Below are positions 7,685 to 31,626 of a DNA stretch of 64,000 nt, piece after piece. Numbering within the stretch: the first letter of the stretch is position 1; each line of letters opens with the position of its first letter. The stretch lies in IMG/VR virus record IMGVR_UViG_3300042391_001376, positions 140,905-204,904 of that record, one strand, 5' to 3'. The translations under genes were made by a program, and so were the position numbers. The notes beneath the pieces are model-generated. The model saw nothing but the letters and a program-made list of their open reading frames with translations. It searched no databases and was not told the origin of the DNA.

Positions 7685-7783
7685 TTTGTGCTCCGTTCAT
7701 GTTTTAAAAATTAAGATTCTATATATTAATATAATATATTATTATATATATACATATTATTTATAACATATATGTATATAGTA

Positions 7784-7804
7784 AGGGGGTAGGGGGTAGG
7801 GGGT
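7784..7804 (+). repeat. three tandem AGGGGGT repeats next to a ~70-bp almost pure A/T tract
   Basis: AGGGGGT x3 at 7784-7804, preceded by a TA-rich run at ~7715-7780. Confidence 0.85.
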
Positions 7805-13334: not shown

Positions 13335-13408
13335 CCCAGTAATACTGTCCATTGGTGGACACTAAACAACATGAACCATACGATAGCCATGGTATGTAAA
13401 ACATTGGG
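13335..13408 (+). ncRNA. candidate structured RNA, copy A of a two-hairpin motif
   Basis: TGTCCA-TTGG-TGGACA CTAAAC ... CATAC...GTATG TAAAAC; covaries with copy B. Confidence 0.55.
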
Positions 13409-13438
13409 CTTTATTCACTTCAAACATAGGAGATAGTC

Positions 13439-13588
13439 ATGGACCATAACAGGACATCATATGCACGTACGTACCGTAAGTACCTACTGCATTGTGTAAA
13501 GCACAACATACCAGTAAATGCAAAGACATGTGCCTATGTAAGGGCATACCTAGTAGAAACATCAATCACCAATAAGGGAGGAAAGTAA
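13439..13588 (+). CDS. small hypothetical protein (49 aa)
   Basis: AGGAG RBS, manually translated. Confidence 0.55.
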   Translation: MDHNRTSYARTYRKYLLHCVKHNIPVNAKTCAYVRAYLVETSITNKGGK

Positions 13589-13590
13589 CC

Positions 13591-13944
13591 ATGTTACCAG
13601 TAACACTAACCACGTGTGAGCAGATGGCTCAGGCGTACAACACACATGCACAGTATGCCGAGGTTATTGGCAAGTACGTGTGCCATGATGGCCAGGCAGT
13701 GTGGATACAGCTTGTTGGGTGCGGTGCATCTGATAGCCATACATTCACACATACCCATAACATCCCAGAGTACATGAATAAGATGTACAATGGAAAGATT
13801 GTCCGCCTTCTAGGTGAGCGTTCATGGGATTCACGTGCACGCATGTGGGGCTACCGCTGGACCCTTCATTCAGTAAACCTATGGGAAGAGTCAGTAAAGG
13901 CTTCTCCTGCAGGTATTAAAGCCTTGTGCGGCACTAACTGCTAA
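13591..13944 (+). CDS. hypothetical protein
   Basis: 117 aa, GGAGG RBS. Confidence 0.7.
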   Translation: MLPVTLTTCEQMAQAYNTHAQYAEVIGKYVCHDGQAVWIQLVGCGASDSHTFTHTHNIPEYMNKMYNGKIVRLLGERSWDSRARMWGYRWTLHSVNLWEESVKASPAGIKALCGTNC

Positions 13945-14020
13945 TTAAGTACATTGTCTATTGGTAGACGTTAACTTCATGACCCAACCGTTAATCAAGA
14001 GGTTGTAAATCACATGGTTA
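13942..14020 (+). ncRNA. candidate structured RNA, copy B of a two-hairpin motif
   Basis: TGTCTA-TTGG-TAGACG TTAAC ... CAACC...GGTTG TAAATC. Confidence 0.55.
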
Positions 14021-15633: not shown

Positions 15634-16437
15634 ATGAAGCCATTCAATCCAGGGGACAAGGTACGTTCCAAGGCAAAGCCTCATATAACAGGCACTGTAA
15701 AGTGGGTTAGGTTTGAACCCAATGGAGTATCTGTTAATAGGCAAAATTCACGTGGAAAATGGAACTATGTCCAGAAGATACCAAAGGGAGGTTATACCGT
15801 ATCTATTAACTGGGATCCAGTCCCACAACTTGGTTACTACCCAGAGCGTCCTTTGCACGGTCTACAGGGGTCTACCGCAATTGAGTTAGTGCCGCAAGAA
15901 AATGTCAATCAAGAAACAACAAACAACGAAAGGAAAGAAGCCATGTCAAATCAACCAACAACAATTCGGGAGGTAAATCCGATGAAGCAGTGCAAACACC
16001 AAGTCTGGGATTGGAAATTAATTCCAGGACAAGTAAACACAGACTACAAGGCAGTTTATTGTGAACTGTGTGGAGAGCAACTGGCTCAACTTGCACCAAA
16101 GAACAAACCAATGACAGATAAGCAGATAAAGTTTATCCGGTCTTTGTTCTTGGAAGTTAAATCAAACATGACAATTGATGAGCAGGAGTCTTTGACAACA
16201 AAGATGAAAGCACATATCGATGGGACAAATGTACTCACCACCAAGTGGGCATCAGCAGCTATTGACAAGCTTAAGGCATACAAGCCTAAGCCTGTTAAGC
16301 CTGTTCAAGTCATGGAAGAGGATGAGCCATTTGGCAAAGTTGAATGTCATGTATGTGGCACGAAATACCAGCCAGAAGAAATGGGCGGATCAGGCACTGA
16401 AGTATTCACCAACGGATGCATCGCATGTCTGTATTAA
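15634..16437 (+). CDS. multi-module hypothetical protein (SH3-like N-terminus, Zn ribbons, TxKQ helical domain); internal in-frame start at 15982
   Basis: PGDKV, CELC, MTDKQIKFI...ASAAIDKL, CHVC; GGAGGT before 15982. Confidence 0.65.
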   Translation: MKPFNPGDKVRSKAKPHITGTVKWVRFEPNGVSVNRQNSRGKWNYVQKIPKGGYTVSINWDPVPQLGYYPERPLHGLQGSTAIELVPQENVNQETTNNERKEAMSNQPTTIREVNPMKQCKHQVWDWKLIPGQVNTDYKAVYCELCGEQLAQLAPKNKPMTDKQIKFIRSLFLEVKSNMTIDEQESLTTKMKAHIDGTNVLTTKWASAAIDKLKAYKPKPVKPVQVMEEDEPFGKVECHVCGTKYQPEEMGGSGTEVFTNGCIACLY

Positions 16438-19157: not shown

Positions 19158-19293
19158 GATAAGTATTATCTTAATGTTATATTCTAAACAAGCACCGTGC
19201 TCTGCCTAGTCCCCAAGACTTGGTTCCACTTTGATTCTAAACACGGTTCAAGAGATTTTCCGCGGTCTGGCCCCCATCACGGGTCTGGCCGTT

Positions 19294-19304
19294 GAATAAG
19301 TCGG
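19294..19304 (+). promoter_or_regulatory. GAATAAGTCGG motif copy 1 (candidate phage RNAP promoter)
   Basis: repeated six times in 19.3-28.9 kb, all on the + strand. Confidence 0.55.
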
Positions 19305-19386
19305 GGTCTTTCGGGACTTCGCCTACTGGTAACATCGGGTTGCTGGTAGTTTATGTGACTACGGTCACAGAAAGGGGTTGGGTCTA

Positions 19387-19914
19387 ATGACTCTTCTCAT
19401 CACTAAGGTTGGTGCACCTACAACGCACACACATAACTTGAAGGACGGCTCAGGCTCGTTCAGCAAGACCGAAATTCCTGTAACCCTACAGGCTAAGTTC
19501 GGTGAGGAAGCAGGCTTTCAGATTGGTGTGAACTACACTGTCTGGATGGACGCTGCTCGTGCAAGCAAAGTCGTCGCGATTGCTCAGGCATTCATTGATG
19601 GCACAGCCACTGACAGTAACGGTGAACTGTATCACCCAAGTTGCCGTCTTGCTGTACTCAACGACAGCGAGTGCTTTACTGCGGGCGAACTGCGGACGAA
19701 AGACTTGACCAACAAGTTTGGTGGCACATACACTGTGACCAACCAGACCATTTGGTTGAAGGACGACACGGCTTTGACTTATGACATTGCCGAGTTGGCT
19801 GTTTCCCCTCAGCGTGGCAATATCGATGACCTCGATATCCTCGTTGACTTCCGTGGTGCTGGTTTGGTTGCGCCAGTTGTTACATCCACTGCTACTGCTG
19901 AAGTGCCTTTCTGA
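19387..19914 (+). CDS. hypothetical protein ending in ATAEVPF (SSB-tail-like)
   Basis: ATG after GAAAGGGG; codon usage typical of high expression; followed by a terminator. Confidence 0.75.
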   Translation: MTLLITKVGAPTTHTHNLKDGSGSFSKTEIPVTLQAKFGEEAGFQIGVNYTVWMDAARASKVVAIAQAFIDGTATDSNGELYHPSCRLAVLNDSECFTAGELRTKDLTNKFGGTYTVTNQTIWLKDDTALTYDIAELAVSPQRGNIDDLDILVDFRGAGLVAPVVTSTATAEVPF

Positions 19915-19935
19915 CACTTTAGTTTTAGCCCGTTT

Positions 19936-19990
19936 TGTCAGTCAGGTCGGTATGCCCCCCCGCATATCGGCTTGACTGACATTTTTTTTT
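19936..19990 (+). terminator. intrinsic terminator
   Basis: 20-bp stem TGTCAGTCAGGTCGGTATGC/GCATATCGGCTTGACTGACA plus T9. Confidence 0.9.
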
Positions 19991-20036
19991 GCAACTAGTT
20001 CCCTAATCTTTTTTTTGTTCCTAGTGTCCTAATCCT

Positions 20037-20050
20037 TAGGAATAAGTCGG
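20037..20050 (+). promoter_or_regulatory. TAGGAATAAGTCGG motif copy 2
   Basis: intergenic, just after a terminator and before an RBS. Confidence 0.6.
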
Positions 20051-20250
20051 AGAAAAGGAGAATAGCATGAGTGAACCTTACATTTGCGGAACAGCAGCAC
20101 CTGATCCTTGCGAATTTGAAAGCGTAGAGCATCATGACGCTACTTGTCAAGAATGTCTATCTTGGTTTCCAACATGGACAGCGGCTCAACAAGCAGCTAA
20201 AGCAGCAAGAGATCTGTGTAAATAATCATAGGACACATATAAAAGCCTAT

Positions 20251-20402
20251 GTACTGGTAGCCTGTAAACCAATGGATGTCGAATCAGGCTGAGTAGTCAA
20301 CACTTATATATACATACGGTCGTTCTACCGATGTAAAGTTGATAATGAACAGTCGAGTTACAGCGACTTTTAAACATTTAGGGTAACCTAGGCCACTGGT
20401 AC
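20251..20402 (+). ncRNA. candidate multibranch structured RNA, possibly related to copies A/B
   Basis: closing stem GTACTGGT/ACTGGTAC; AGCCTG/CAGGCT; stem-TAAA-ATGAAC-stem-TAAAC. Confidence 0.4.
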
Positions 20403-20490
20403 AAGGGCGACATTATTGTACTGTCTGACATATGCAGGAATAGCGTTGTATCAATATGTTATATTATTCATCTCAATTGAAAGGATTGTT

Positions 20491-20769
20491 ATGGGAATTC
20501 AAGATGACTCATTTGATGTTAATCTTATTGCGACCAAAGAAGGTCTAATAAAGATTAGCCAGATGACTTTGCTAGAAACGGTCAAGGAAATGAACCGCCG
20601 TACAGACTCATTGCTTGAGATCTGTGAATCACACCAAATACTTATTGAGCAGTTGTCCGATAAAGTTATTTCTTTACAGGACGCACTTGATAATCTCAAG
20701 CCTTGCCAATGCTGTGGAAACAACCCATGCCTCGAATCACTCGATGCAACTAAACATGGAGACTACTAA
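20491..20769 (+). CDS. hypothetical coiled-coil protein
   Basis: AAGGA RBS before the ATG at 20491. Confidence 0.6.
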   Translation: MGIQDDSFDVNLIATKEGLIKISQMTLLETVKEMNRRTDSLLEICESHQILIEQLSDKVISLQDALDNLKPCQCCGNNPCLESLDATKHGDY

Positions 20770-21011
20770 TGGATCTCATCTTACCTTTAGGCATTCTAAT
20801 CCTCATATCAGCAGTCTTCGTTCGCGGGATTGTGCGATATGTTGCCGGCAACCCATGGAAGTTACATCGTTGCATGAACCACCAGTTCTACTTTGAAGAA
20901 ATAGATTGTCGTGGAATATATTGTGGCGTATGTCACAAGGACATAGACATTGAGTATTATTCTAAAGGAATAAGTCGGGAGGGAATAACCCATGAAAATA
21001 CAAATGATTGA
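20769..21011 (+). CDS. membrane-anchored hypothetical protein
   Basis: hydrophobic N-terminus, CxxH/CxxC. Confidence 0.6.
   Translation: MDLILPLGILILISAVFVRGIVRYVAGNPWKLHRCMNHQFYFEEIDCRGIYCGVCHKDIDIEYYSKGISREGITHENTND
20966..20978 (+). promoter_or_regulatory. AGGAATAAGTCGG motif copy 3
   Basis: exact core repeat. Confidence 0.55.
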
Positions 21012-21179
21012 TGACATACCACGCAAAGGTTTGTGTGCCATATGTCACAAGACCAAACTCACAGTAACAGTATCAATCAAATCCAAAGGAAGTCCTATAA
21101 TCACCACTGAAGATTGGTGCTTAGAAGATTTCCACACACTACAAGATAAAACACTCACACTACACTGAAAGGTAGAACC

Positions 21180-21473
21180 ATGATATCAAAATATGAAACA
21201 AAAGATGAAAACTGGGAATCCTATGGTTTTCTTAATGTACTAACCGAATATCACACACGCCCTCAAGGTATGATCAGTTCAATGCGAGCTGAAAAATACA
21301 ACGATGGTAATGTTCATATTGAATTCAACATTCAAAGCCCAAGTGGTACACCAGATTCATCTGACTTCCTAACCTACACTATGCTAGAAATCAATTCATT
21401 TGAACGCGCTAAAGCTATTGTAGATATGTATGCAACCATGTTAGACTCTTACATTCTAAAGATGTCAGCATGA
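21180..21473 (+). CDS. hypothetical protein
   Basis: 97 aa, AAGG RBS. Confidence 0.65.
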   Translation: MISKYETKDENWESYGFLNVLTEYHTRPQGMISSMRAEKYNDGNVHIEFNIQSPSGTPDSSDFLTYTMLEINSFERAKAIVDMYATMLDSYILKMSA

Positions 21474-21668
21474 AAACATTCGGACTAATCTCAATATCAT
21501 TTGCTGCGGGTAGCATCTCAATGATGATGTGGATTCGCAAAATATTCAATAAAACAATGAAAGGAACCTTGTGAAAAAACTTGCAATCATCACTACAACA
21601 ATAGCATTCGTTATTGCCGGCTTAGCATTATACATCAAAAAGATGACATTGTTCAAAGGAGAATAAAC

Positions 21669-21902
21669 ATGAAGCATAAAATACTACTAACATTTGCAAT
21701 TCTTACTTTAGCTATTCCAGTTTCTACTGCAAACGCTAAAGGTGGAGGAAGTCATTGTGTAAAAATATTTAATCAATCAACTAAAATTTGGGGCTGGAAT
21801 TGTGAAGGTAAACCTAAATTCTTTATATGTGGTAAAGCCTACAGATGCATGTCATTACCACCAGGAACTAAAATTTACGCTACAGGCCAAATTTACCCTT
21901 AA
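21669..21902 (+). CDS. small secreted Cys-containing protein
   Basis: signal peptide ending ANA, AAGGAG RBS. Confidence 0.65.
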   Translation: MKHKILLTFAILTLAIPVSTANAKGGGSHCVKIFNQSTKIWGWNCEGKPKFFICGKAYRCMSLPPGTKIYATGQIYP

Positions 21903-21915
21903 AAGGAGAATAAGC

Positions 21916-22182
21916 ATGAACTATAAGAAACTATTCTGGGGCTACATGGCATTTAGTGCTATCACTGGCTTCTTTATTGGCATTGTGCGCGGCATTGAGC
22001 AAGAAAAGATCAAGCGTCGCTTACGCAATAACCCATTGTCTGCCAGTAAAGCATTTCAAGAAGTGTACGGACACTACAACAATGATGACCTAGACTTTCC
22101 TGAATGGGTCAACACTGATGAAGACGCTAGATTCAATAGCATTGTAGGCCGTCTAAACCATCCAACGAACCGACAGAAGTAG
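21916..22182 (+). CDS. membrane-anchored hypothetical protein
   Basis: AAGGAG RBS, N-terminal TM helix. Confidence 0.65.
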   Translation: MNYKKLFWGYMAFSAITGFFIGIVRGIEQEKIKRRLRNNPLSASKAFQEVYGHYNNDDLDFPEWVNTDEDARFNSIVGRLNHPTNRQK

Positions 22183-22193
22183 GAATAAGTCGG
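22180..22193 (+). promoter_or_regulatory. TAGGAATAAGTCGG motif copy 4
   Basis: exact repeat at a gene end. Confidence 0.6.
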
Positions 22194-22287
22194 GATATTT
22201 TCGGAGGGGGGTGACCGTTGTTTGATTGGCTATTCGATATTATCCAAGATATATTAGATTCAATATTCAACTAAGGAGAAAAACATT

Positions 22288-22467
22288 ATGTTAGGTAAAT
22301 TTCTAGGCAAAGTTACTGGCAAATCAGTGGAAGTAGTTACTGCTACGCCAGATTTTCTAAAGACGAACACTAAAGCGACTATGGAAGCACTCAAGAGTGC
22401 AAAAGATGGATTCGTAACTGATTTCAAGGCTGAATACAACAAGCCTGAAGTAACTAACGAGGACTAA
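22288..22467 (+). CDS. small hypothetical protein (59 aa)
   Basis: AAGGAG RBS, manually translated MLGKFLGKVTG... Confidence 0.6.
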   Translation: MLGKFLGKVTGKSVEVVTATPDFLKTNTKATMEALKSAKDGFVTDFKAEYNKPEVTNED

Positions 22468-22546
22468 TACAAAGATTTGGGCTAGTCCCAAAATAAGCAA
22501 TAAACACATATCATATCCACATAATAAACACATAAGGAATAAACAC

Positions 22547-23590
22547 ATGTCATTACTCGAAAAATTCGGTTACAAGAAAGACGAGTTCGCAATCGCTTTG
22601 GAAAACCCAGAGTTGTTTGCATCAAACTCAACTACCACTAAAATTACTGTTGGTACACCAGCCAAGATTGCTGGTTCTATCAATGGCGTTGCTGTTCCAA
22701 CCACCATTCTAGTAAAGAATGCTAACTGGAGCCGTCTCACCGTGCGTGACCATGTTATCCGTCGTCAGGACGCAGAGCCACGCATCAGCCAAGTATTCGG
22801 TGGTGTATTCAATAACTTCCAAGCAGACATCACGCTTGAAGTTGATGGTACTGAAATGTCATTGTATGAACTCATGAAGCAGTTCTGCATCGAATCGTTC
22901 GGTACATCCCTTACAGATGACCAAGTAAACAAGATGTTGGAGAGCAACCTTTCGCTCAACGGCATTCGTAACGGTGGCCCTCTGATGTTCCAGCAAATGG
23001 GTGCAAATCCTGCTGGTATCGCACACGCAGTAGAAGCGTTCCGTACAGCTGGAGCAATTGACGATATGAAGTCTGTTGCATCAAGCAAATCATTCAATAC
23101 AGCTTATAAGATTCCTGGCGATGGTGCTGGTCTTGAAGTTGTATCGTTTGAACTTGGTACATCTGACCGTTCACTCTCAAAGACAGGACAAGGCTTCATT
23201 GACATCGTCAGTGCAGTGACTGAGAACTTTGAGCGTGTAAAGAATCACAAGTCTGTTGCTAAAGTATTGCAGGACAAGTTGAACGCAAGCATCGGTTCAA
23301 TGAGCCAAGAAGCAATCAAGAAAGCACAGGCAGAAATCAAGATTGAACTTGACATGGCTAAAGACTATGCTAACTGCTGGTCTGGTGCTGCTCGTCAAAC
23401 CAAGATTGACAATGGTCGCAAGATCGTTGAGAACAAGTACAATGCAGTAAACGCCCCATGTGGTCGTTGGTCTGCAGTAGTTGCTGGTCAAACCATCGAC
23501 TTTGATGTATGGTCAAACTCGACAAAAGCACCAGTACAAACCGCAGAACAGCAGATCAGCGATATCGCAACCGCTGAGGTACCGTTCTAA
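22547..23590 (+). CDS. hypothetical protein ending in ATAEVPF (SSB-tail-like)
   Basis: 347 aa, AAGGA RBS, followed by a hairpin. Confidence 0.8.
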   Translation: MSLLEKFGYKKDEFAIALENPELFASNSTTTKITVGTPAKIAGSINGVAVPTTILVKNANWSRLTVRDHVIRRQDAEPRISQVFGGVFNNFQADITLEVDGTEMSLYELMKQFCIESFGTSLTDDQVNKMLESNLSLNGIRNGGPLMFQQMGANPAGIAHAVEAFRTAGAIDDMKSVASSKSFNTAYKIPGDGAGLEVVSFELGTSDRSLSKTGQGFIDIVSAVTENFERVKNHKSVAKVLQDKLNASIGSMSQEAIKKAQAEIKIELDMAKDYANCWSGAARQTKIDNGRKIVENKYNAVNAPCGRWSAVVAGQTIDFDVWSNSTKAPVQTAEQQISDIATAEVPF

Positions 23591-23602
23591 GGTTATCTAA
23601 AT

Positions 23603-23652
23603 TTGGTGGGGTTGGCCTGACTGATCGCGGGTCAACCCTACTAATAAACTTT
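23603..23652 (+). terminator. probable terminator or stabilising hairpin
   Basis: TTGGTGGGGTTGGCCTG/CGGGTCAACCCTACTAA stem. Confidence 0.6.
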
Positions 23653-23760
23653 TAGTGGGTAGTAAGTGTGCACATTCCCGATGAATGCTGCGAACCAACC
23701 ATTTGCTACCCACTATTTAAGTATAATAAAAAAAATTTTATTAACTCAAAAAGGATTAAC

Positions 23761-24024
23761 ATGAGCACCCCACTTGAAATGCTAAATATCCAGCGTTGGA
23801 TGAAGGACGCCGCATGCAAAGGAAACACTGAAGGTGACTGGTTCCCAGAACAACCAGGCAGGACCCCAGCTATCAAAATAGCAATAGACATCTGTAAGCA
23901 ATGCGCGGTAAAACAAGAATGCTATGATTATGCTATAAACCGCCCAGAACTACAAGGCATCTGGGGTGGAGTAACAGCACGCAAACGTGGGAACCTACGA
24001 TCCAAAGGAAAGAAAAGTGAATGA
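23761..24024 (+). CDS. whiB: WhiB-family Fe-S transcription factor
   Basis: W...AACKG...WFP...CxxCxVxxxC...GIWGG. Confidence 0.92.
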   Translation: MSTPLEMLNIQRWMKDAACKGNTEGDWFPEQPGRTPAIKIAIDICKQCAVKQECYDYAINRPELQGIWGGVTARKRGNLRSKGKKSE

Positions 24025-24394
24025 ATACCCAACAAATTATCCTAAGCATGGCTTTCACATGTGTCATGGGTGCGGGTCTATGGCTCCGCATCATACTCAA
24101 GAAAACTTTCCAGATAATGGATGGGCATTTAATCTCAATCACTTCGGATACTATGCCGGCTTCACAGATCCAATCGGAGAACCAGAACAACTAGTCAGAC
24201 TATGTCACGACTGCGTAATAAAGTTCCTAGACGCCTTCCCACTACTCAGTGTACTAGTAGGCAAAGGATGCCACAGCCAATCAGGCCCCAATGAAAAACC
24301 ATGCTGTCAATATGCATGGAAAGCAGAATGGATAGGCAACAGTGCCATAACCTATTTAGCTTCAGAAGATGGCCAACAATGGATCATCCAATAA
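24017..24394 (+). CDS. Cys/His-rich hypothetical protein
   Basis: GTG start after AAGGA; CHGC, GYYAGFTD, LCHDC. Confidence 0.65.
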   Translation: MNEYPTNYPKHGFHMCHGCGSMAPHHTQENFPDNGWAFNLNHFGYYAGFTDPIGEPEQLVRLCHDCVIKFLDAFPLLSVLVGKGCHSQSGPNEKPCCQYAWKAEWIGNSAITYLASEDGQQWIIQ

Positions 24395-24556
24395 CACTCT
24401 CTATTACTCCCTATATAACAATACTACTCCCCAAACCTTTTTTCTTGGGGGGCCGAGCGAAGCGAGGCCTCCCTTACCCTAGTAGACTTCCGCAAGGAAG
24501 CTCATAAAAAAATTCGAGGTAGTCCTCAGACCGCCGAGAAAAAAAGAGTACAGATG

Positions 24557-24586
24557 TTGCAAGTGAGTACACGAGACTGCTATACT
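24557..24586 (+). promoter_or_regulatory. sigma-70-type promoter with extended -10
   Basis: TTGCAA-N18-TATACT with TG. Confidence 0.65.
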
Positions 24587-24623
24587 GATATCCTAGGAAA
24601 TAAACACTAAAAGGAGATTATGT

Positions 24624-24839
24624 ATGCCTCGGCAGCATCAATCTAAAGCTGTTCGGAAAGTTCTTGCAGAACTAACCAGACTAGGCTTTAACGTTGAACA
24701 AAAGAAATCAGGTGTCTATCGGATCACTCCACCCCCAGGGGTAGATGGTCCACTGTATACGACACATGGCACGGAATCAGCATTGCATCCGATGCGCCGT
24801 GACTTTAAAAAATATTATAACATAGATATCAACGTTTAA
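24624..24839 (+). CDS. HicA-like small RNA-binding/toxin-fold protein
   Basis: helix-GF-strand-KKSG-strand...T.HGT pattern; family is inference. Confidence 0.5.
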   Translation: MPRQHQSKAVRKVLAELTRLGFNVEQKKSGVYRITPPPGVDGPLYTTHGTESALHPMRRDFKKYYNIDINV

Positions 24840-25186
24840 AGTGTTTGCTTCCATGGGAGAGCTCATCTCGTATCTCTACTAGGTGGTGGTAGCTATACTT
24901 GGGTGGGTGGGCTCTCCCGCCCCCCTACACTATAAGTATTAAATTAAGTTTAATAATAAGATTAAGCTTACACTACCTCTACCACACACACACAAAACCT
25001 AGACCCAACCCAACAAAAATGTTAGACAAACCAATAAATGGAACCCTCTCGCCCCAGCACCCATTATAACTTATATAACTCAGTATAAATCGATATAAAC
25101 ATATAGATACACATGTGTACACACATCTATTCCGTATACAGTACACTTGTGTACACAATAAAGAATTCTCCCTCTGAATTCTGATA

Positions 25187-25200
25187 TAGGAATAAGACAG
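25187..25200 (+). promoter_or_regulatory. TAGGAATAAGACAG motif copy 5
   Basis: variant of the repeated motif, intergenic. Confidence 0.45.
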
Positions 25201-25277
25201 ATCAACAATGCCTAGTCCGTATAGGATAGTATTAGAATAGTATTAGAATAAACAATGTATCGTGAAAGGATACTTAT

Positions 25278-25709
25278 ATGCTCTTTATGATGATGATATG
25301 GTTAGCTGTAGCTTCTACCGTAGTAGAAATGATGTTCGCGGCAAGGATCCCAGCCTGGCGTAAGAACGCACACAAATACAAATGGGTTAACATGGCACTA
25401 TCCTTACTCTTATCATTCGTCCTAGGTGTAATGTTCGGTGCAGCCGGACTAATCGCCTTAGGTGCAGCCATGATATCCACCGTCCTATCCATCCCAGGCT
25501 ATGCTATCCTACACTGGAATTATGATTCCAAGGAAGCACAAAAGCATGGTGGCAATATGACGCATTACCTTCGCGGCAAATGGATACAAGCATTCAAAGA
25601 CCTAGCAAAGGTTATTTACGGAATTATTAGAATAATCACATTCCCCATCTGGGCAACCAGAGCAGTAATAAATAAACTTAACTCAGTCAAACAACGTAGG
25701 ACGGCATAG
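25278..25709 (+). CDS. integral membrane protein
   Basis: several hydrophobic helices. Confidence 0.75.
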   Translation: MLFMMMIWLAVASTVVEMMFAARIPAWRKNAHKYKWVNMALSLLLSFVLGVMFGAAGLIALGAAMISTVLSIPGYAILHWNYDSKEAQKHGGNMTHYLRGKWIQAFKDLAKVIYGIIRIITFPIWATRAVINKLNSVKQRRTA

Positions 25710-25768
25710 ACATCCTGTCAGCGAAAGCAATATAACAAAAAATTACAAAAAAATTTCGCGCCGAACGG

Positions 25769-25841
25769 GCCTTGGTAGCTCAGGGGATAGAGCAACGGAC
25801 TTCTAATCCGCAGGTCGTAGGTTCAATTCCTACCCAAGGCG
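25769..25841 (+). tRNA. tRNA-Arg(TCT)
   Basis: GCCTTGG/CCAAGGC acceptor, CT-TCT-AA loop, GGTTCAATTCC. Confidence 0.95.
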
Positions 25842-25886
25842 CCCACTCAAAATCAAAGAAGTGACAACCAAAGCAAAGGACATGTA

Positions 25887-26252
25887 ATGGCCAAATACTC
25901 TATGACATGGGAAGACCACTACTTTATCTTCTACAAGATGAACCGCAACAGAACCATAACTTCTGTCGGTACACCAAAGGAAATAACCCTTTGTAATAAC
26001 AAATACAACGAAGCATTCTACGGCGTTCGAGCCGGCAAATACGGTATTTTTATACCGTCAGACGCAGAACGCTGGGGAGTCTTCAGTTTTATCAATAACA
26101 TATGGACACCACAATTTGGTGACCTTATACCTAAAGAATATGAACGCCAACTGTACACTCTGGACCAAGGACGCTTTGCGCTCCTCAGAAGAAGTACAGT
26201 GAATATTAATTTCTCAATAACCACCAAAACAAACACAAAGGCTAAATCATGA
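25887..26252 (+). CDS. hypothetical protein
   Basis: 121 aa, AAGGA RBS. Confidence 0.65.
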   Translation: MAKYSMTWEDHYFIFYKMNRNRTITSVGTPKEITLCNNKYNEAFYGVRAGKYGIFIPSDAERWGVFSFINNIWTPQFGDLIPKEYERQLYTLDQGRFALLRRSTVNINFSITTKTNTKAKS

Positions 26253-26893
26253 GTACCGTCCGAATCAACCTCCCAAATGACATCACTATTGAAGCAACAC
26301 CCGACCAAGCAGTTGCTATCCTAGCCAAGCTGTCTACCCCTAACGCAGAGACTGAAGATCAGCGTATTAACAGAATTAAAGCTCAGAATGCGGCAATTAA
26401 GCCTAAGCTTGAAGCCGAACTAAAAGAGCTTGAAGCCAAGATTGTCAAAGACAAGAAGGCTCCAGCTAATAAAACAATCATTGCTGACCTTCCAGTATCA
26501 TCACAAATCAGTCGTCCACAGCGTGAAGTATTGGACTCAATATTCTTCTACGCCCCAAGCAGAACAAAGTCTAAAGGCAAAGCAGCTTATGTGGCGGCCA
26601 TCTTAATGGATCGCGAAATACACAGCATGCAAGAGCTTAAGCGTCTTTCTAATGCGCCAACAAGCACCGTCACATTTGCTATACGCCGTCTACGCGAAGC
26701 TGGTAGCACCGTTGAAGTTAGCTCGCAAGTAATGAGTAAGAATACTTTAGTACAGCTTACTCGTCTTGCTAAACCTAAGTTTAAAGTTAACAGAACACTT
26801 ACGCGTACTAAAACAAAGACACAGAATTCCTCTGCGTCAGCAAAGAATTCACCAATCATAATCCCTAAAGGATTCACAGAACTAACCGTGTAA
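26249..26893 (+). CDS. basic protein with probable winged-helix domain
   Basis: HSMQELKRLS...TVTFAIRRLREAG. Confidence 0.6.
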   Translation: MSTVRINLPNDITIEATPDQAVAILAKLSTPNAETEDQRINRIKAQNAAIKPKLEAELKELEAKIVKDKKAPANKTIIADLPVSSQISRPQREVLDSIFFYAPSRTKSKGKAAYVAAILMDREIHSMQELKRLSNAPTSTVTFAIRRLREAGSTVEVSSQVMSKNTLVQLTRLAKPKFKVNRTLTRTKTKTQNSSASAKNSPIIIPKGFTELTV

Positions 26894-26906
26894 ACGGTTA
26901 ACAAGT

Positions 26907-27029
26907 TGTCAGTACTGGGCTATGTAATCAAGGTTGTTCATGGTCTGATTGCACAGGGTCCCTTTCAACTTAAACTTCCTGAGAGTTTAAGTCCGCTCCG
27001 CTTCCCCAGGCGTGAGCCCCAGTCTGGCA
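26907..27029 (+). ncRNA. candidate four-way-junction structured RNA
   Basis: closing TGTCAG.ACTGGG/CCCAGTCTGGCA with three internal hairpins. Confidence 0.45.
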
Positions 27030-27047
27030 TTTATTTAAAGGAATATT

Positions 27048-27509
27048 ATGACCATAACACAAACAGAAATACCAGCACATATAGAGCAATTACTTGATGT
27101 ACACAATACATTATGGGATGCTCTCTCAGACTCCTATGCCGGTTTAAAATTAGACTATAAAGGCAGTAAGTATGATATATATAAGCCAGAACATAATGGC
27201 TTTACATCTACTGTTCTATCTAATGACAACGGCAAAAACTTTTTGTGGATTACACAAAATTTAAACAAGTCATCTTACGGTTCATTCGAAATTAAAAGAG
27301 CTCGCTCTCAAGGAGACGATAAACGTATCACTTGGATAGTTGATAACAGCAATGATAAATTTTATTATTGCGCTCTTATTAAAACTTGTGTTTATTTTGA
27401 TGGCAAAAAAGATATTCTTGTCGAAAGATATATCAACGATAACACAGAAGTTGTTTATTGTACCAATCCAACTTATGCAAGTTACGTTACACACAAATCA
27501 AAATATTAA
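27048..27509 (+). CDS. hypothetical protein
   Basis: 153 aa, AAGGA RBS. Confidence 0.7.
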   Translation: MTITQTEIPAHIEQLLDVHNTLWDALSDSYAGLKLDYKGSKYDIYKPEHNGFTSTVLSNDNGKNFLWITQNLNKSSYGSFEIKRARSQGDDKRITWIVDNSNDKFYYCALIKTCVYFDGKKDILVERYINDNTEVVYCTNPTYASYVTHKSKY

Positions 27510-27584
27510 CTCAAAAATGTTGGACACCTTAATTTATACACCTTAGGTGTTCACGCATACATTATATATATATTTCTTGTAATG

Positions 27585-27613
27585 TTGCATTCTAATAAAT
27601 TAAGTGTTATACT
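27585..27613 (+). promoter_or_regulatory. sigma-70-type promoter with extended -10
   Basis: TTGCAT-N17-TATACT with TG. Confidence 0.65.
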
Positions 27614-27699
27614 ATATTTCTAGTAAAAATAAGATATTATTTATATACCTATATATACCTTTCATAACTCAAATTAACTCACATTAAGGACATATTATC

Positions 27700-27903
27700 A
27701 TGGCTAAGCCTTCAAAAACACCCCTCATTCAAGAATTCATTTCAATGAATAATGGAAAGACATTTTCCACAAAAGAGATGTGCAAAGAAATCGGAGTAAG
27801 TCTTCCTACTCTTCTTGCATTCATCAAAAACAATCCAGACACCTTTAGCTCAATGAGCTATGGCGTCTACAAGATCGAAGTAAACATACAGGCTACATAC
27901 TAA
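27700..27903 (+). CDS. small HTH DNA-binding protein
   Basis: FSTKEMCKEIGVSLPTL. Confidence 0.7.
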   Translation: MAKPSKTPLIQEFISMNNGKTFSTKEMCKEIGVSLPTLLAFIKNNPDTFSSMSYGVYKIEVNIQATY

Positions 27904-28040
27904 AACATATATACAAATAAAGAATGAAACTTAACTTTTATTCTTTATACAGGTACTATTCATCTATCGTTAATAAACGATAGCGCAGGTAAGTTAACAC
28001 TTACCCATCCCCTAAACAAGGATATGTATTGAATAGATAC

Positions 28041-28069
28041 TTGTTACACCACCATATATGTGATAGAAT
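28041..28069 (+). promoter_or_regulatory. sigma-70-type promoter
   Basis: TTGTTA-N17-TAGAAT with TG. Confidence 0.55.
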
Positions 28070-28075
28070 AATACC

Positions 28076-28171
28076 AATGCCCGTAACCAGCGGGCAGGGG
28101 AATAATCCCTAACGTAACAGAGAAATACTGTGAAGTCGGAGATGGCTAACCTTGCCACTGTGACGGGCATT
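28076..28171 (+). ncRNA. candidate structured leader/sRNA upstream of the lytic transglycosylase
   Basis: long closing stem AATGCCCGT...ACGGGCATT with internal hairpins, starting at the predicted TSS. Confidence 0.5.
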
Positions 28172-28269
28172 TCGTATATGTCCGCACATCTTCGGTTTCG
28201 CAACCTGCGCCGTACTAATGGTTTCCATTTCGGAAATCAGACAAAGACGAAAAGGAGCGAACACGGAAT

Positions 28270-28866
28270 ATGCAGAATAAATATAACAAATCAATTATAG
28301 GTGTTATAGCTATATTTTTAGCTTTAACAACTGGAGCCAATGCGCTACTTGCGCAAAAAGTTCCTGACATGGAACCTCCCAGTACCCCTTGGGTACTTAG
28401 ACACATTCCCGACATAATTGAAAGTAAAACAGCACAAGAACCAATTGCCTTTAAACATGGTGATGTATCATGGTTGGCAGACCTAGCTATTAAAGTAGGC
28501 TGGCCCAAGAAAACAATACCTCGCTTAGAGCACATTGTTCTTCGCGAATCAGGCGGTTGTCCTAACCGCATTGGTGGATCCATAGTTGATAAGAACTGTA
28601 ATATTATTGGACACACAGGTGCTACCAATAAATCCGACTCAGGATTATTACAGATCAACGGTGTTAACTGGGATCCTAAAAGACCAGGAACACAAATTGC
28701 TTGTGCTCGACTTAGGATATGTACACAGGAAGCTATATTAGATCCTGTCAACAATCTTAAAGTGGGACTTCTTCTTTATGAAGAAGCTGGTTGGGGACCT
28801 TGGGACCCATGTCAGTGGGGCCCAGAGTACGCAAGCAGATGCAAAACAATGCCTAAAATGCCTTGA
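28270..28866 (+). CDS. secreted lytic transglycosylase (SLT/lysozyme-like)
   Basis: signal peptide; RESGG catalytic Glu, DSGLLQIN, DPVNNL, GWGPW. Confidence 0.88.
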   Translation: MQNKYNKSIIGVIAIFLALTTGANALLAQKVPDMEPPSTPWVLRHIPDIIESKTAQEPIAFKHGDVSWLADLAIKVGWPKKTIPRLEHIVLRESGGCPNRIGGSIVDKNCNIIGHTGATNKSDSGLLQINGVNWDPKRPGTQIACARLRICTQEAILDPVNNLKVGLLLYEEAGWGPWDPCQWGPEYASRCKTMPKMP

Positions 28867-28888
28867 TGATAATAATCATTTAGGTTTA

Positions 28889-28902
28889 TAGGAATAAGAC
28901 GG
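28889..28902 (+). promoter_or_regulatory. TAGGAATAAGACGG motif copy 6
   Basis: intergenic, upstream of polymerase paralog 2. Confidence 0.55.
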
Positions 28903-28925
28903 GGGGCCGAAAGGCCCCCCTTTTT
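28901..28925 (+). terminator. GC hairpin with GAAA loop and T-run
   Basis: GGGGGGCC-GAAA-GGCCCCCC-TTTTT. Confidence 0.75.
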
Positions 28926-28992: not shown

Positions 28993-31626
28993 ATGAACAT
29001 GCCAATATATCAGCCTGCCGTCCGTTTACAAACAATGCACAACGGACCATTGCGAAGCATTAACGATTATCAATTTGGATTCTATGATGTCGGCTTCGGT
29101 CGGCAAGCTCTTCAATATCTTCACGAAGTAGAAGGTCTTGAAAATCCAATATTTAGAATGGCTACTATGCCAATTCCTTCCAATAAGATTGAAGCAAAGA
29201 TTGCAGAAGCATACATCCGTAATCCTAACATCTGCTATTCAATAGTAGATAAAAATAAGATCGTATTAGTACATATCAACGGCAACGATGGTTGGCTTGA
29301 TGTATACAAGAAACTTGGTTATGAAATCCTTAGTGGCGACAAGACAGCTAAGCGACTCAAAACCTTCCACCGTGCAGCATTGTTAAATGCTCACTTCACT
29401 AAAGATGAAATCAATGTCCAGATCGTAGATCCAGATGAATATTCATCTTGGTCATTTGAAGATCCATCCTTTCAAGAATGGGCTACAAAAGAATACCCTA
29501 ATATCGACGTTACAGATCCTAAGGTCATCGAGCGTTTGCTTGATGGCGGTTTCGTAATCTCTCGTAAGTTTATTCAGCGTGCAGCTGAAAACTTACCAGT
29601 ATACGAACCACACAAAACTTTAGATACTAAAGAATATTATTACGACTGGCGTGTTCGTAAGAACTTTATTAAAGATATGATGGAATGCTCTATATTCAAT
29701 ACTCGTATTGTATTCGAAGAGGGTTTCCTCAAGGGCAATGCCATCGTATCTGACAACATGCCAGAAGGTGTAGATATTATCACTACACGCACAAATATAA
29801 AGAACGAAATCAAGTATCACAATGGCTTTCAGTTTCTAGCTGAGCCAGTGGGATCGTATGATTCTGTTCTTACTGACACCCAAACTGTTATTAATCTTCC
29901 TAAACTATTCCCTAACGCTGATCTAGAGTATTGGCTTGACGAAGAATACAAAAAGATCTTTGATCTTGCTGTATCCGACAAGCTACTCACTAACTGGCGT
30001 GCAGTTTACAAGCGTCAGTTCCGCAAAATCCACGAAGCAGAAGACGAAGAAGCATATGCCCGCATGAACTATGTGGGCTATCGTTGGCGTAAGCTTGGCA
30101 TGAAAATCACTGATTCACCATGGTTGTTTGAAACCTTGGCGATCAGTCATGCCCGACCATTTGCCGATTCATCTAAGCCTCGTATACCAGTTCCATGCGC
30201 AATAAGTGAACAGGTTATTCCTGAGTCACTTTCTCGTATGGCTGGCTATGACATCGAAGTAGACCAAGGCAAGATACGACGTATCGAAGAACTTGGTGTA
30301 CACGTAGTTAGTGACCTTGACTGGCTAGAAATGTATGAGAGCCATGGCGGTCACGACGAGGACGACTACTTCAAGCTGTTCTATCGCACCATGCGTGGTG
30401 GCGAATACGACGGCAAGAAGGTAGTTATCATCTGCCGTTCACCCAATGACCTTGGTGAGTATTCAATCTTTGAATACACCGAAGGTGATTGGTCTCCAGT
30501 ATGGCACAACGCTGCTGGTATCCCAACAGAATTTCCAGAAATAAGCGGACGTGACTGGCCAAAGCGTTTAAGTAAAGCTATCTTTGATGGCGACATTACT
30601 TATTCAGGTTTGCCATCTAAATCACTACCTAAAACTAAGCCTGAACAGGCACCCTATACACCTGACGACGTCATTCGAGATATGAATATCGCAATGGCTG
30701 GCGGTCAAATCGGTGGATATGTAAATGCTTGCATGCTTTATTCTTCGGTGATTCACCGTCACCGTCCAATTCAATTGTGCACTTTAGAGACTGCTCTCGA
30801 CAAATGCATTAACCCAGATTCTATAGAAGATGTTATAGCAATTGACAACGAAGCTAAAGCTATTGTTCGTCAAGTTATCGAAAGCAAAACCCCAATCGAT
30901 CAATTCGTTTGGAGTACTCGTGGTTCAGCCCGTTTACTTGAAGAAGATGATGATCTTCTGATAGATGAAAACGGCAAGCTAACCATGATGTCTAAATTAT
31001 GCTATGATAAATTTGCAGAACACACTGCTCGCGTTCGTGAATGGGCACAAAATAATGCCCGTCCATCCGATCCACGCATAGCAGAATTGGGCAATAGCCA
31101 ATTGCAAATGTTCTATCATGCACTACCAATTGTCAACCAGTTCCGCTCAGGCATATGGTCAATTAATACATCTGAAGCAACAGCTGAAAATGGATCTATT
31201 GTACGCAACTCTTGGGAATATTTATATTCCAAACAAGTTGACATCATCAATTCATTTGAACTTGAATCTGATCGTCACGACTTCGTACTTGCACTATATT
31301 CTGTCTGTCTTAATGTGCCAACCAAAGGTGGCAAAATTACAGACCATTATATGATGAACAGATTTGTTTATCCATATCTAGAATCCGCTTTGCAGTATTA
31401 TGGTTTGGGCAAATCTGTCAACTTCCTGATGCAAGAAGATGGTGATGTTAAGATTCTCGAAACATTAGTTACCGAATGGAAGTTTACCGATCCTGAAGGC
31501 AACTCAACTTTATTCAATGATCCAATTGAATTTCAACAAGCTCAGTCTGTTTATTCTAAAGTTCAATTTGTTACAAATTCTGCTTCGTTACTTTCTTCGG
31601 AAGTACGAACTACTTCAAAGTATTAA
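28993..31626 (+). CDS. putative YonO/RdRP-like two-barrel RNA polymerase (paralog 2, variant DEDD loop)
   Basis: KTAKRL, LDGGFVIS, R...FLKG, NIK, RIPVP, GGHDEDDYF (acidic loop 30355-30366), ICRSP, IGGYVN; colinear with 16482..19157. Confidence 0.7.
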   Translation: MNMPIYQPAVRLQTMHNGPLRSINDYQFGFYDVGFGRQALQYLHEVEGLENPIFRMATMPIPSNKIEAKIAEAYIRNPNICYSIVDKNKIVLVHINGNDGWLDVYKKLGYEILSGDKTAKRLKTFHRAALLNAHFTKDEINVQIVDPDEYSSWSFEDPSFQEWATKEYPNIDVTDPKVIERLLDGGFVISRKFIQRAAENLPVYEPHKTLDTKEYYYDWRVRKNFIKDMMECSIFNTRIVFEEGFLKGNAIVSDNMPEGVDIITTRTNIKNEIKYHNGFQFLAEPVGSYDSVLTDTQTVINLPKLFPNADLEYWLDEEYKKIFDLAVSDKLLTNWRAVYKRQFRKIHEAEDEEAYARMNYVGYRWRKLGMKITDSPWLFETLAISHARPFADSSKPRIPVPCAISEQVIPESLSRMAGYDIEVDQGKIRRIEELGVHVVSDLDWLEMYESHGGHDEDDYFKLFYRTMRGGEYDGKKVVIICRSPNDLGEYSIFEYTEGDWSPVWHNAAGIPTEFPEISGRDWPKRLSKAIFDGDITYSGLPSKSLPKTKPEQAPYTPDDVIRDMNIAMAGGQIGGYVNACMLYSSVIHRHRPIQLCTLETALDKCINPDSIEDVIAIDNEAKAIVRQVIESKTPIDQFVWSTRGSARLLEEDDDLLIDENGKLTMMSKLCYDKFAEHTARVREWAQNNARPSDPRIAELGNSQLQMFYHALPIVNQFRSGIWSINTSEATAENGSIVRNSWEYLYSKQVDIINSFELESDRHDFVLALYSVCLNVPTKGGKITDHYMMNRFVYPYLESALQYYGLGKSVNFLMQEDGDVKILETLVTEWKFTDPEGNSTLFNDPIEFQQAQSVYSKVQFVTNSASLLSSEVRTTSKY

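What the first reader, a model, noticed from the sequence alone, without database searches (positions are those of the whole stretch)
19294..28902. Six co-oriented TAGGAATAAG(T/A)C(G/A)G motifs: candidate promoter of the phage polymerase
Copies occur at 19294 (GAATAAGTCGG core only), 20037, 20966, 22180, 25187 and 28889. All are on the + strand, at or near gene boundaries, downstream of polymerase 1, and the last is just ahead of polymerase 2. Five of six run into GG, and two run directly into a GC hairpin (GGGGTCT-TTCG-GGACTTC; GGGGGGCC-GAAA-GGCCCCCC). This fits initiation at a G with a 5' stem. The motif does not resemble sigma-70 boxes. Inference: a T7-like cascade in which RNAP1 transcribes the region up to RNAP2.
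Basis: partly seen in the sequence, partly recalled or inferred. Interest (0 to 1): 0.78.

Follow-up and report, generated by a model that had tools for sequence, protein, structure and literature searches.

The report
Promoter-like motif of a phage RNA polymerase
Six copies of a 12-base signal lie just ahead of genes between two unusual phage RNA polymerase genes, and related lake phages carry their own version of the signal at the same places, so it is most likely that polymerase's promoter, though no transcript start has been mapped.

Summary
The window is the last 64 kb of a 205-kb uncultured lake-water phage. The host is probably an actinobacterium, because the phage carries a WhiB gene.

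A weight-matrix scan of the whole genome finds exactly six sites of G-GAATAAG-(T/A)-C-(G/A)-G. All are on the + strand, within window 19291-28902, and 13-90 nt ahead of start codons.

"Polymerase 1" (P1) and "polymerase 2" (P2) are not T7-like. Both are paralogous single-chain two-barrel enzymes of the RdRP/QDE-1/YonO/P23-45-gp64 fold. P1 has an invariant DxDGD loop. P2 has a DxDD loop.

The strongest evidence is comparative. In every relative examined, the stretch downstream of the P1 gene holds a co-oriented, lineage-specific motif that is A-rich and ends in a G run. Where the record extends as far as the P2 gene, the motif reaches it. Two of these relatives were blind tests. In the complete genomes the motif occurs nowhere else.

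Best reading (about 0.6): a promoter read by a phage-encoded polymerase, most likely P1, that drives a middle-gene module including P2.

Not shown: transcript 5' ends, and which enzyme reads the motif. The metatranscriptome data were contigs only.

This is a new variant of a known strategy.

The parts
16482..19157 (+). P1, a single-chain two-barrel RNA polymerase. An alternative upstream ATG lies at 16416. The catalytic loop is DQDGD at residues 499-503 of the 913-aa reading.
   Evidence: AF2 model has pLDDT 82.8. Structural alignment (VIA-align): maize RDR2 Z 12.2, QDE-1 Z 10.8, P23-45 gp64 Z 10.1, P74-26 gp62 Z 9.9, and unrelated chains 5.2 or less. D499, D501 and D503 are invariant in 17 homologs. 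A GGGAGG ribosome-binding site lies before 16482.
19181..19241 (+). Two ATTCTAAA boxes (19181-19188 and 19234-19241) between the P1 stop and the first motif copy.
   Evidence: ATTCTAAA boxes, mostly in pairs, stand in this intergenic region in seven of the eight lineages printed, not in G008. The 8-mer itself is common genome-wide, with 40 copies. Function unknown.
19279..19293 (+). Upstream element ACGGGTCTGGCC(GTT), abutting motif copy 1.
   Evidence: ACGGG(T)CT stands directly 5' of the first copy, or of the first tandem copies, in own, G001, L014, G002, G010, G006 and G008, even though the downstream motif differs between them. L044 has GGGTCTGGC in the same place.
19291..19304 (+). Motif copy 1 (GTTGAATAAGTCGG), 27.3 bits.
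19302..19349 (+). Structured leader: two hairpins (19302-19321 and 19323-19349) before gene 19387-19914.
   Evidence: Folds at -21 kcal/mol, z -3.7. By eye, similar stems in G001 (not folded).
19936..19990 (+). Strong intrinsic terminator (20-pair stem plus T9). It ends the first unit, about 47 nt before copy 2.
20037..20050 (+). Motif copy 2, 16 nt before the ATG at 20067.
20965..20978 (+). Motif copy 3 (AAGGAATAAGTCGG), 13 nt before the ATG at 20992. It lies inside the last 46 nt of ORF 20769-21011.
22180..22193 (+). Motif copy 4. Its TAG is the stop codon of ORF 21916-22182. It lies 24 nt before a conserved 18-codon ORF (22218-22274).
25187..25200 (+). Motif copy 5 (the GACAG variant), the weakest at 20.9 bits. 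It has no counterpart in G001.
28889..28902 (+). Motif copy 6, 90 nt before P2.
   Evidence: The same arrangement occurs in G001 and G010.
28901..28925 (+). GC hairpin plus T5, an intrinsic-terminator form. Its 5' arm begins in the motif's G run.
   Evidence: G001 and G010 carry a like GC hairpin with another loop (TTGT for GAAA).
28993..31626 (+). P2, a paralogous two-barrel polymerase with a DxDD loop (D455, D457, D458).
   Evidence: Profile comparison of P1 and P2 families: hhalign probability 99.9%, E 4.5e-31. Invariant residues in 20 sequences. AF2 model pLDDT 82.2. Structural alignment: RDR2 Z 12.5, QDE-1 Z 10.0, gp62 Z 9.3, unrelated chains 4.1 or less.

Best explanation
The 12-bp element G-GAATAAG-(T/A)-C-G-G is the promoter of a phage-encoded single-chain two-barrel RNA polymerase, most likely P1 (16482-19157).

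Proposed sequence of events:
- P1 is made from the upstream + strand unit.
- P1 binds the asymmetric element.
- It opens the A/T-rich AATAAG part.
- It starts RNA in the G run at the 3' edge of the element.

Six such starts would define a middle-gene module (19.3-31.6 kb and probably beyond). The module includes a WhiB-like regulator, a tRNA and the paralogous polymerase P2.

Shown here: the motif, its exclusivity, its orientation, its position, its conservation and lineage-specific replacement in relatives, and the fold of both enzymes.

For: 1. There are exactly six sites in 205 kb, all on the + strand. They score 20.9-31.8 bits against 15.4 for the next hit.

2. Every site lies 13-90 nt upstream of a start codon. 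Copy 2 follows a 20-pair terminator.

3. Syntenic conservation. G001 (216 kb, P1 70% identical) has 5 copies, all forward, only at 61.8-71.8 kb, with diverged flanks. L014 also carries the motif. G002 (P1 53%) carries GGAATAAGTGGGG.

4. Lineage-specific replacement at the same places:
- G010: YAAAAGGGGGG, 7 copies.
- G006 (complete 209.7-kb genome): AAAATAGGGG, 8 copies, only at 151.6-159.6 kb.
- G008: 10 copies.
- Orthologous sites, for example ahead of the FDWLFD micro-ORF and ahead of P2, carry each lineage's own motif.

5. Two blind predictions were met. L042 (P1 25%) has GAAAAACAGGGG 6 times, all downstream of P1, all intergenic, none on the reverse strand. L044 (P1 24%) has AACAAAAAGGGG 4 times, all downstream of P1 and all intergenic.

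6. P1 and P2 are two-barrel polymerases. P1 has an invariant DxDGD loop.

7. No sigma-70 region 2 is encoded in the genome, and sigma-70-like boxes are at chance.

8. Lake metatranscriptome contigs begin 20-30 nt after copies 1, 2 and 4 (at 19331, 20070 and 22216). Depth is 0 in all four runs in the bins just upstream of copies 2 and 4.

9. There is a precedent. P23-45 has two two-barrel polymerases, each with its own motif (PMC10770324).
Against: - No 5' end was mapped. The metatranscriptome evidence is low-depth, direction-less contigs, and one contig (X4, 20857-21133) crosses copy 3.
- Copy 6 is followed at once by a full terminator hairpin plus T5. That would be odd for a productive start unless the enzyme ignores it or starts inside the stem.
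- Nothing links the motif to P1 rather than to P2 or an unknown factor except position and gene order. The identity matrices are compatible with P1 tracking, but unrooted trees cannot show incongruence.
- G006 and G008 share a motif although their P1 proteins are only 37% identical.
- For two related enzymes no promoter motif is known: none was detected for crAss gp66 (bioRxiv 10.1101/2020.03.07.982082), and YonO's is undetermined (PMC5467207).
- Pfam RdRP (PF05183) does not match P1 or P2.
Confidence: 0.6

Rival explanations
1. The motif is a promoter, but it is read by P2, or by P1 and P2 acting together. One version: P2 is delivered with the virion and P1 has another role.
For: P2 is also a two-barrel polymerase. 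It is more widespread (247 hits against 49 for P1) and more conserved than P1. The motif precedes the P2 gene itself, which would allow positive feedback. P23-45 and phiKZ-type phages use a virion polymerase first (PMC10770324, PMC7598289).
Against: P2 is 57-60% identical between lineages whose motifs differ. It is only 48% identical to G002, whose motif is nearly the same as here. The P2 catalytic loop is the non-canonical DxDD. The motif cluster begins directly after the P1 stop in every lineage.
Confidence: 0.12
2. The motif acts in RNA, as a processing or cleavage site, a stability element or a translation element in polycistronic transcripts.
For: It is strand-specific and lies close to ribosome-binding sites, with gaps of 13-24 nt at three sites. 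It resembles local ribosome-binding-site contexts such as AGGAGAATAA. One metatranscriptome contig runs through copy 3. Copies 1 and 6 abut RNA hairpins.
Against: Gaps to the start codon range from 13 to 90 nt, and no start codon stands at ribosome-binding-site distance. Copy 2 lies behind a 20-pair terminator plus T9, so little read-through RNA would exist there to be processed. The rapid lineage-specific change of the motif points to a fast-evolving phage-encoded reader. No nuclease candidate was identified in the module: the 10 larger ORFs between P1 and P2 that were scanned gave only one Pfam match, WhiB.
Confidence: 0.12
3. The motif is a promoter read by host RNA polymerase redirected by a phage factor, such as a non-sigma-70 specificity protein or the WhiB-like protein.
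For: A WhiB gene lies in the module (23761-24024). T4-type late promoters are short single blocks. GGAAT resembles the -35 element of actinobacterial ECF sigma factors (my own knowledge).
Against: No conserved second block stands 16-18 nt downstream; information is confined to 12 contiguous positions. Other lineages lack GGAAT altogether. No sigma-70 region 2 is encoded in the genome. The motif is confined to the P1-P2 module, not spread over the genome.
Confidence: 0.1
4. The motif is an operator for a DNA-binding regulator, or an antitermination or pause site, rather than a start site.
For: It is short and conserved, and it sits next to terminators at copies 2 and 6.
Against: It is not palindromic. 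Orientation is strict: 6 of 6 here, and 5 of 5, 8 of 8, 7 of 7 and 6 of 6 in relatives. No alternative promoter-like element is conserved in the same spacers.
Confidence: 0.05

Closest known systems
Thermus phage P23-45: gp96 virion polymerase and gp64 non-virion polymerase, with their AT-rich and GC-rich promoter motifs (PMC10770324)
   Same: A phage with two single-chain two-barrel polymerases of the RdRP-like clade. Short motifs upstream of early genes are assigned one to each enzyme. One polymerase gene lies in the other's regulon. P1 and P2 models align to gp64/gp62 at Z 9-10 and to gp96 at Z 7-8.
   Different: Here the two enzymes are clear paralogs of similar size (hhalign E 4.5e-31), and neither is fused to a tape-measure protein. 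The motif sequences are unrelated. The host and phage type differ: a roughly 205-kb lake phage, probably of actinobacteria. There is no ChIP or start-site data here. P2 has DxDD instead of DxDxD.
T7/T3/SP6/K11 single-subunit polymerases and their promoters
   Same: An asymmetric duplex element directly upstream of the start. Initiation would be in a G run. Each lineage has its own specificity, giving orthogonal enzyme-promoter pairs. The polymerase gene is followed by its own regulon.
   Different: The enzyme fold is unrelated: two-barrel, not Pol I-like. PF00940 has no match, though that control was uninformative. The element is about 12 bp rather than about 23 bp. Only six sites exist and they cover a small module.
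YonO of Bacillus prophage SPbeta (PMC5467207)
   Same: A roughly 100-kDa single-chain two-barrel DNA-dependent RNA polymerase that transcribes a defined block of phage genes.
   Different: YonO drives one late operon from one mapped start, and its promoter sequence is still undefined. YonO matches Pfam RdRP, whereas P1 and P2 do not.
crAss-like phage phi14:2 gp66 (bioRxiv 10.1101/2020.03.07.982082)
   Same: An RdRP-like two-barrel phage polymerase for early genes. Structural alignment gives Z 4.8 for P1 and 6.2 for P2.
   Different: gp66 is a domain of a giant virion protein, and no common motif was found upstream of its transcripts.
phiKZ/AR9 jumbo-phage virion and non-virion polymerase relay (PMC7598289)
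   Same: A jumbo phage with two phage polymerases and class-specific short promoters.
   Different: Those enzymes are multisubunit beta/beta'-like. Here both are single chains of the RdRP-like clade.

Membership tests
Promoter of a phage-encoded RNA polymerase | A conserved asymmetric motif, over-represented and restricted to the phage that encodes the enzyme | tested here: met
   Six sites at 20.9-31.8 bits against 15.4 for the next hit in 205 kb. Relatives have 5 to 10 copies confined to the same module.
Promoter of a phage-encoded RNA polymerase | Co-oriented with, and upstream of, the genes it serves | tested here: met
   All copies are on the coding strand, 13-90 nt before start codons. 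In L042 6 of 6 and in L044 4 of 4 copies are intergenic by independent gene calls.
Promoter of a phage-encoded RNA polymerase | The motif changes with the polymerase lineage | tested here: met
   Seven variants occur across P1 lineages from 70% to 24% identity, at orthologous positions. Whether the motif tracks P1 rather than P2 is inconclusive.
Promoter of a phage-encoded RNA polymerase | Primary transcript 5' ends at a fixed distance from the motif | tested here: inconclusive
   Only metatranscriptome contigs were available. They begin 20-30 nt after copies 1, 2 and 4, and none crosses copy 1, 2 or 4; one crosses copy 3, and copy 5 has no cover on either side. No read ends were available.
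Promoter of a phage-encoded RNA polymerase | Motif-dependent initiation by the purified enzyme | not testable with these tools
   The complex prediction was not folded by the tool.
T7-like single-subunit RNA polymerase (Pol I-like fold, PF00940) | Pol I-like palm/fingers/thumb fold or a PF00940 match | tested here: not met
   No Pfam match. Both models match two-barrel polymerases only.
Two-barrel RdRP/QDE-1/YonO-type single-chain polymerase | Overall fold with two double-psi beta-barrels | tested here: met
   P1: RDR2 Z 12.2, QDE-1 Z 10.8, gp64 Z 10.1, Foldseek probability 1.00. P2: RDR2 Z 12.5, QDE-1 Z 10.0. Unrelated chains score 5.2 or less.
Two-barrel RdRP/QDE-1/YonO-type single-chain polymerase | Catalytic DxDxD loop | tested here: met
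   P1 has DQDGD, invariant in 17 sequences. P2 has DxDD, one residue shorter, with all three Asp invariant in 20 sequences. So the feature is met for P1 and only partly for P2.
Two-barrel RdRP/QDE-1/YonO-type single-chain polymerase | Sequence match to Pfam RdRP (PF05183) or to solved relatives | tested here: not met
   No match for P1, P2 or nine distant family members. A profile search against PDB sequences found none. ESM features place P1 next to PF05183 clusters at 0.94.
Sigma-70-type promoter | -35 and -10 hexamers at 16-18 nt spacing | tested here: not met
   Matches are at chance, 52 against 50.2. The motif is a single 12-bp block.
Intrinsic terminator (hairpin after copy 6, and 19936-19990) | GC-rich stem followed by a T run | tested here: met
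   8 GC pairs plus T5 at 28901-28925, and 20 pairs plus T9 at 19936-19990.

The most novel reading that the evidence does not exclude
These uncultured jumbo lake phages run a relay built entirely from two paralogous RdRP-like single-chain polymerases. P1 evolves fast, and each lineage has its own roughly 12-bp A-rich/G-run promoter. That gives a natural series of at least seven orthogonal enzyme-promoter pairs. P2 is conserved, has a DxDD loop, and would read a different, conserved signal. Candidates for that signal are the terminator-TTATGACTAG cassettes seen upstream of P1 in relatives, or P2 may act from the virion.
Probability: 0.35. Interest if true: 0.75.

Novelty: new variant of a known kind. 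Interest (0 to 1): 0.62.

Why it matters
Promoter sequences for single-chain two-barrel (RdRP-like) phage polymerases have so far been proposed only for P23-45. YonO's promoter is undefined, and crAss gp66 showed no common motif.

This finding offers a family of about 100-kDa polymerases with short, sharply defined candidate promoters that differ between lineages. That would make promoter recognition by this ancient polymerase class directly testable through swap experiments between lineages. It could also supply compact orthogonal transcription parts.

It also gives a first outline of the gene-expression programme of an abundant, uncultured group of lake phages of about 200 kb.

Tried and rejected
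- Pfam and PHROGs on P1 and P2 gave no match.
- A profile search against PDB sequences found none.
- tblastn of P1 and P2 against 50,697 GenBank phage records found none.
- PF05183 was absent from nine distant family members, so no sequence bridge to YonO exists.
- The P1-plus-promoter-DNA complex was counted by the tool but not folded, so it gives no evidence either way.
- Only assembled contigs at depth 2-5 could be laid on the region, so there was no 5'-end resolution.
- A ribosome-binding-site reading of AGGAATAAG was rejected. No start codon stands at the right distance, and the gaps range from 13 to 90 nt.
- An ECF-type GGAAT -35 reading was rejected. There is no -10 partner, and other lineages lack GGAAT.
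- TTACTATA(T) was considered as a P2 or late promoter. It is enriched upstream of 17 genes here, but in relatives it is no more frequent than the control, so it remains only a lead.
With three groups, an unrooted tree cannot show it, so only pairwise identities are reported.
- Rfam shows only the tRNA in 12.5-32 kb.

Full report
**Setting**

The window is bases 140,905-204,904 of a 204,904-bp IMG/VR virus record. The record is 97% complete and has 37% G+C. Genes up to about 148.9 kb lie almost all on the minus strand. The window from about 8.2 kb onward is a plus-strand block. A WhiB gene (window 23761-24024) points to an actinobacterial host. All sequencing runs that hold the region are lake or river water.

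**The observation**

- The 14-mer occurs 4 times against 0.01 expected.
- The 11-base core occurs 6 times at 0 mismatches, all on the + strand.
- A weight matrix built from this clade and scanned over the whole genome gives six sites at 20.9-31.8 bits. The next hit scores 15.4 bits, on the strand opposite the genes. Information sits in 12 contiguous positions, G-GAATAAG-W-C-G-G.
- Copy 3 reads AAGG rather than TAGG, and its frame starts at 20965.
- Gaps to the next start codon are 82, 16, 13, 24, 77 and 90 nt.
- Copy 4 precedes an 18-codon ORF that is conserved across lineages.
- Two copies run into stable hairpins: z -3.7 at copy 1 and z -2.9 at copy 6. The other four have no structure.
- The hairpin at copy 6 has 8 GC pairs followed by T5, so it has the form of an intrinsic terminator.
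- A much stronger terminator (20 pairs plus T9) lies at 19936-19990. That is after the first gene downstream of copy 1 and about 47 nt before copy 2.
- Sigma-70-like matches are at chance, and the genome encodes no sigma-70 region 2.

**The two "polymerases"**

Neither protein matches Pfam or PHROGs, PDB sequences or any GenBank phage record.

P1:
- The AF2 model has pLDDT 82.8.
- By Foldseek it matches maize and Arabidopsis RDR2 and P74-26 gp62.
- By structural alignment (VIA-align) it matches a run of 17 two-barrel polymerases: RDR2 Z 12.2, QDE-1 Z 10.8, P23-45 gp64 Z 10.1, gp62 Z 9.9 and gp96 Z 8.2. Unrelated chains begin at Z 5.2, and crAss gp66 scores 4.8, among them.
- The ESM atlas places it next to PF05183 clusters.
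- DQDGD at residues 499-503 is invariant in 17 homologs.

P2:
- It is a paralog of P1 (BLASTP E 7e-6; hhalign 99.9%, E 4.5e-31 over 565 columns).
- It has the same fold (pLDDT 82.2; RDR2 Z 12.5, unrelated chains 4.1 or less).
- Its catalytic loop is DxDD, one residue shorter than the canonical loop. All three aspartates are invariant in 20 sequences.

So the enzymes are of the RdRP/QDE-1/YonO/P23-45 kind, not T7-like. The P1 family has 266 representatives at 50% clustering. P2 has more close relatives than P1 (247 against 49).

**Comparative evidence**

The P1-then-P2 order, with 8-10 kb between them, is kept in relatives whose P1 is 70% to 33% identical.

| Relative | P1 identity | Motif | Copies and place |
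|---|---|---|---|
| G001 (216 kb, complete) | 70% | same as here | 5, all forward, only at 61.8-71.8 kb, at the orthologous spacers with diverged flanks; the last copy is followed by a GC hairpin plus T run ahead of P2 |
| L014 | 67% | same as here | present |
| G002 | 53% | GGAATAAGTGGGG | 3 |
| G010 | 39% | YAAAAGGGGGG | 7 |
| G006 (complete, terminal repeats) | 33% | AAAATAGGGG | 8, only at 151.6-159.6 kb |
| G008 | 37% | AAAATAGGGG | 10 |

Orthologous sites carry each lineage's own motif. Examples are the site ahead of the FDWLFD micro-ORF, the site ahead of P2, and the tandem pair right after P1.

I then made two blind tests on more distant P1 homologs.
- L042 (25% identity) has GAAAAACAGGGG 6 times. 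All are downstream of P1, all are intergenic by independent gene calls, and none is on the reverse strand.
- L044 (24% identity) has AACAAAAAGGGG 4 times, again all downstream of P1 and all intergenic.

The common theme is an A-rich block ending in a G run. This behaviour fits a signal read by a fast-evolving phage-encoded factor. It is hard to reconcile with a host sigma factor or a host RNase.

**Which enzyme reads it**

This step is inferred. Three points favour P1:
- The cluster starts directly after the P1 stop in every lineage.
- P2's own gene lies behind the last copy.
- P1 has the canonical catalytic loop.

Pairwise identities lean the same way. G002 shares the motif, with P1 53% and P2 48% identical. 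G006, G010 and G008 have other motifs, with P1 34-41% but P2 57-60% identical. With only three groups, however, an unrooted tree cannot show incongruence. G006 and G008 also share a motif at 37% P1 identity.

**Transcript data**

Lake metatranscriptomes hold parts of the region. Only contigs at depth 2-5 could be laid on it.
- Cover begins at 19331, 20070 and 22216, which is 20-30 nt after copies 1, 2 and 4.
- The bins just upstream of copies 2 and 4 are empty in all four runs.
- One contig crosses copy 3, which lies inside an operon with no terminator before it.

This is consistent with starts at the motif, but it does not test the idea.

**Mechanism proposed**

P1 is made from the upstream unit. 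It binds the duplex element and starts in the G run. Six units follow.
- Unit 1 has a structured leader and ends at the 19936 terminator.
- Units 2-5 cover small genes, the WhiB gene and tRNA-Arg.
- Unit 6 leads into P2 and probably onward, since no strong + strand terminator is seen up to about 49 kb.

The terminator form of the hairpin after copy 6 is unexplained. It may stop upstream transcripts while P1 ignores it, or P1 may start inside its 5' arm.

**Comparison with known systems**

The nearest system is P23-45, with two two-barrel polymerases and a motif for each (PMC10770324). YonO's promoter is undefined (PMC5467207). crAss gp66 transcripts showed no common motif (bioRxiv 10.1101/2020.03.07.982082). 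RdRP-like polymerases have been noted in actinophages before (bioRxiv 10.1101/842583).

The strategy of a phage polymerase with its own promoters in a cascade is known. What is new is this enzyme family, the paralog pair with a DxDD member, and the lineage-specific motif series.

**Verdict**

The promoter reading is the best explanation, at about 0.6. "T7-like" is wrong as to enzyme class. The assignment to P1 and the start site remain to be shown.

Noticed in passing
window 13352 and 13961 (about 13340-13985): Two hairpins with the same TTGG loop and compensating stem changes (GTCCA/TGGAC and GTCTA/TAGAC). They sit in successive spacers of the unit that contains P1. The second, with its flank TAAACTTCATGACCC, recurs upstream of P1 in G010 (L019:6222). 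It could be a signal for whatever transcribes P1.
   Followed up: partly
L012:1514-6689 (G001) and L024:1944-9898 (G006): Upstream of P1, relatives carry 7-8 co-oriented cassettes. Each has TTATGACTAG preceded by a T run and followed by a short palindrome; most also have a terminator hairpin before the T run. The cassette is conserved between lineages whose P1-side motifs differ. L044 has a similar ATTTTTTGAGGCTAGT, 3 copies. The present genome has none. This may be a second promoter class for a conserved reader.
   Followed up: partly
window 19181-19188, 19234-19241 and 19279-19293: Two ATTCTAAA boxes and an ACGGGTCTGGCC element lie between the P1 stop and the first motif copy. They recur in most lineages examined (ATTCTAAA not in G008, ACGGGTCT not in L042). 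Their function is unknown.
   Followed up: partly
whole genome, e.g. window 6260, 7784, 12208, 62320 and 63412: TTACTATA(T/A) lies 25-45 nt upstream of start codons of 17 genes, mostly in the minus-strand block. It is a candidate late-promoter element. It is not enriched over the control in relatives.
   Followed up: partly
window 22218-22274: An 18-codon ORF (LFDWLFDIIQDILDSIFN) directly behind motif copy 4. It is conserved at the peptide level in G001, G010, G006 and G008.
   Followed up: no
P1 homologs P0002-P0012: Many P1 homologs are 1068-1133 aa long, with an N-terminal extension of about 200 aa that is absent here. The extension is not homologous to the upstream ORF 15634-16437. One homolog carries PF08719.
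   Followed up: partly
window 7780-7800: A triple GGGGGTA repeat in the divergent spacer between the minus-strand and plus-strand blocks. It lies next to a long AT-rich tract.
   Followed up: no
genome 108.6-109.6 kb (outside the window): A 72-bp in-frame tandem repeat inside a large minus-strand gene.
   Followed up: no
window 8262-9248; 25769-61894: A RecA gene (Pfam E 7e-116) and seven tRNA genes on the + strand. tRNA-Arg lies inside the motif-bearing module. The only hit to a GenBank phage covers window 25770-25857, 89.8% identical over 88 bases to Actinomycetia phage DSL-LC01; this stretch largely coincides with that tRNA.
   Followed up: no
window 59938-61184: Spacers late in the + strand block carry good sigma-70-like boxes, for example TTGACT with a spacer and then TATATAAT, and TAGTATAAT. 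This suggests host-polymerase transcription of those genes.
   Followed up: no
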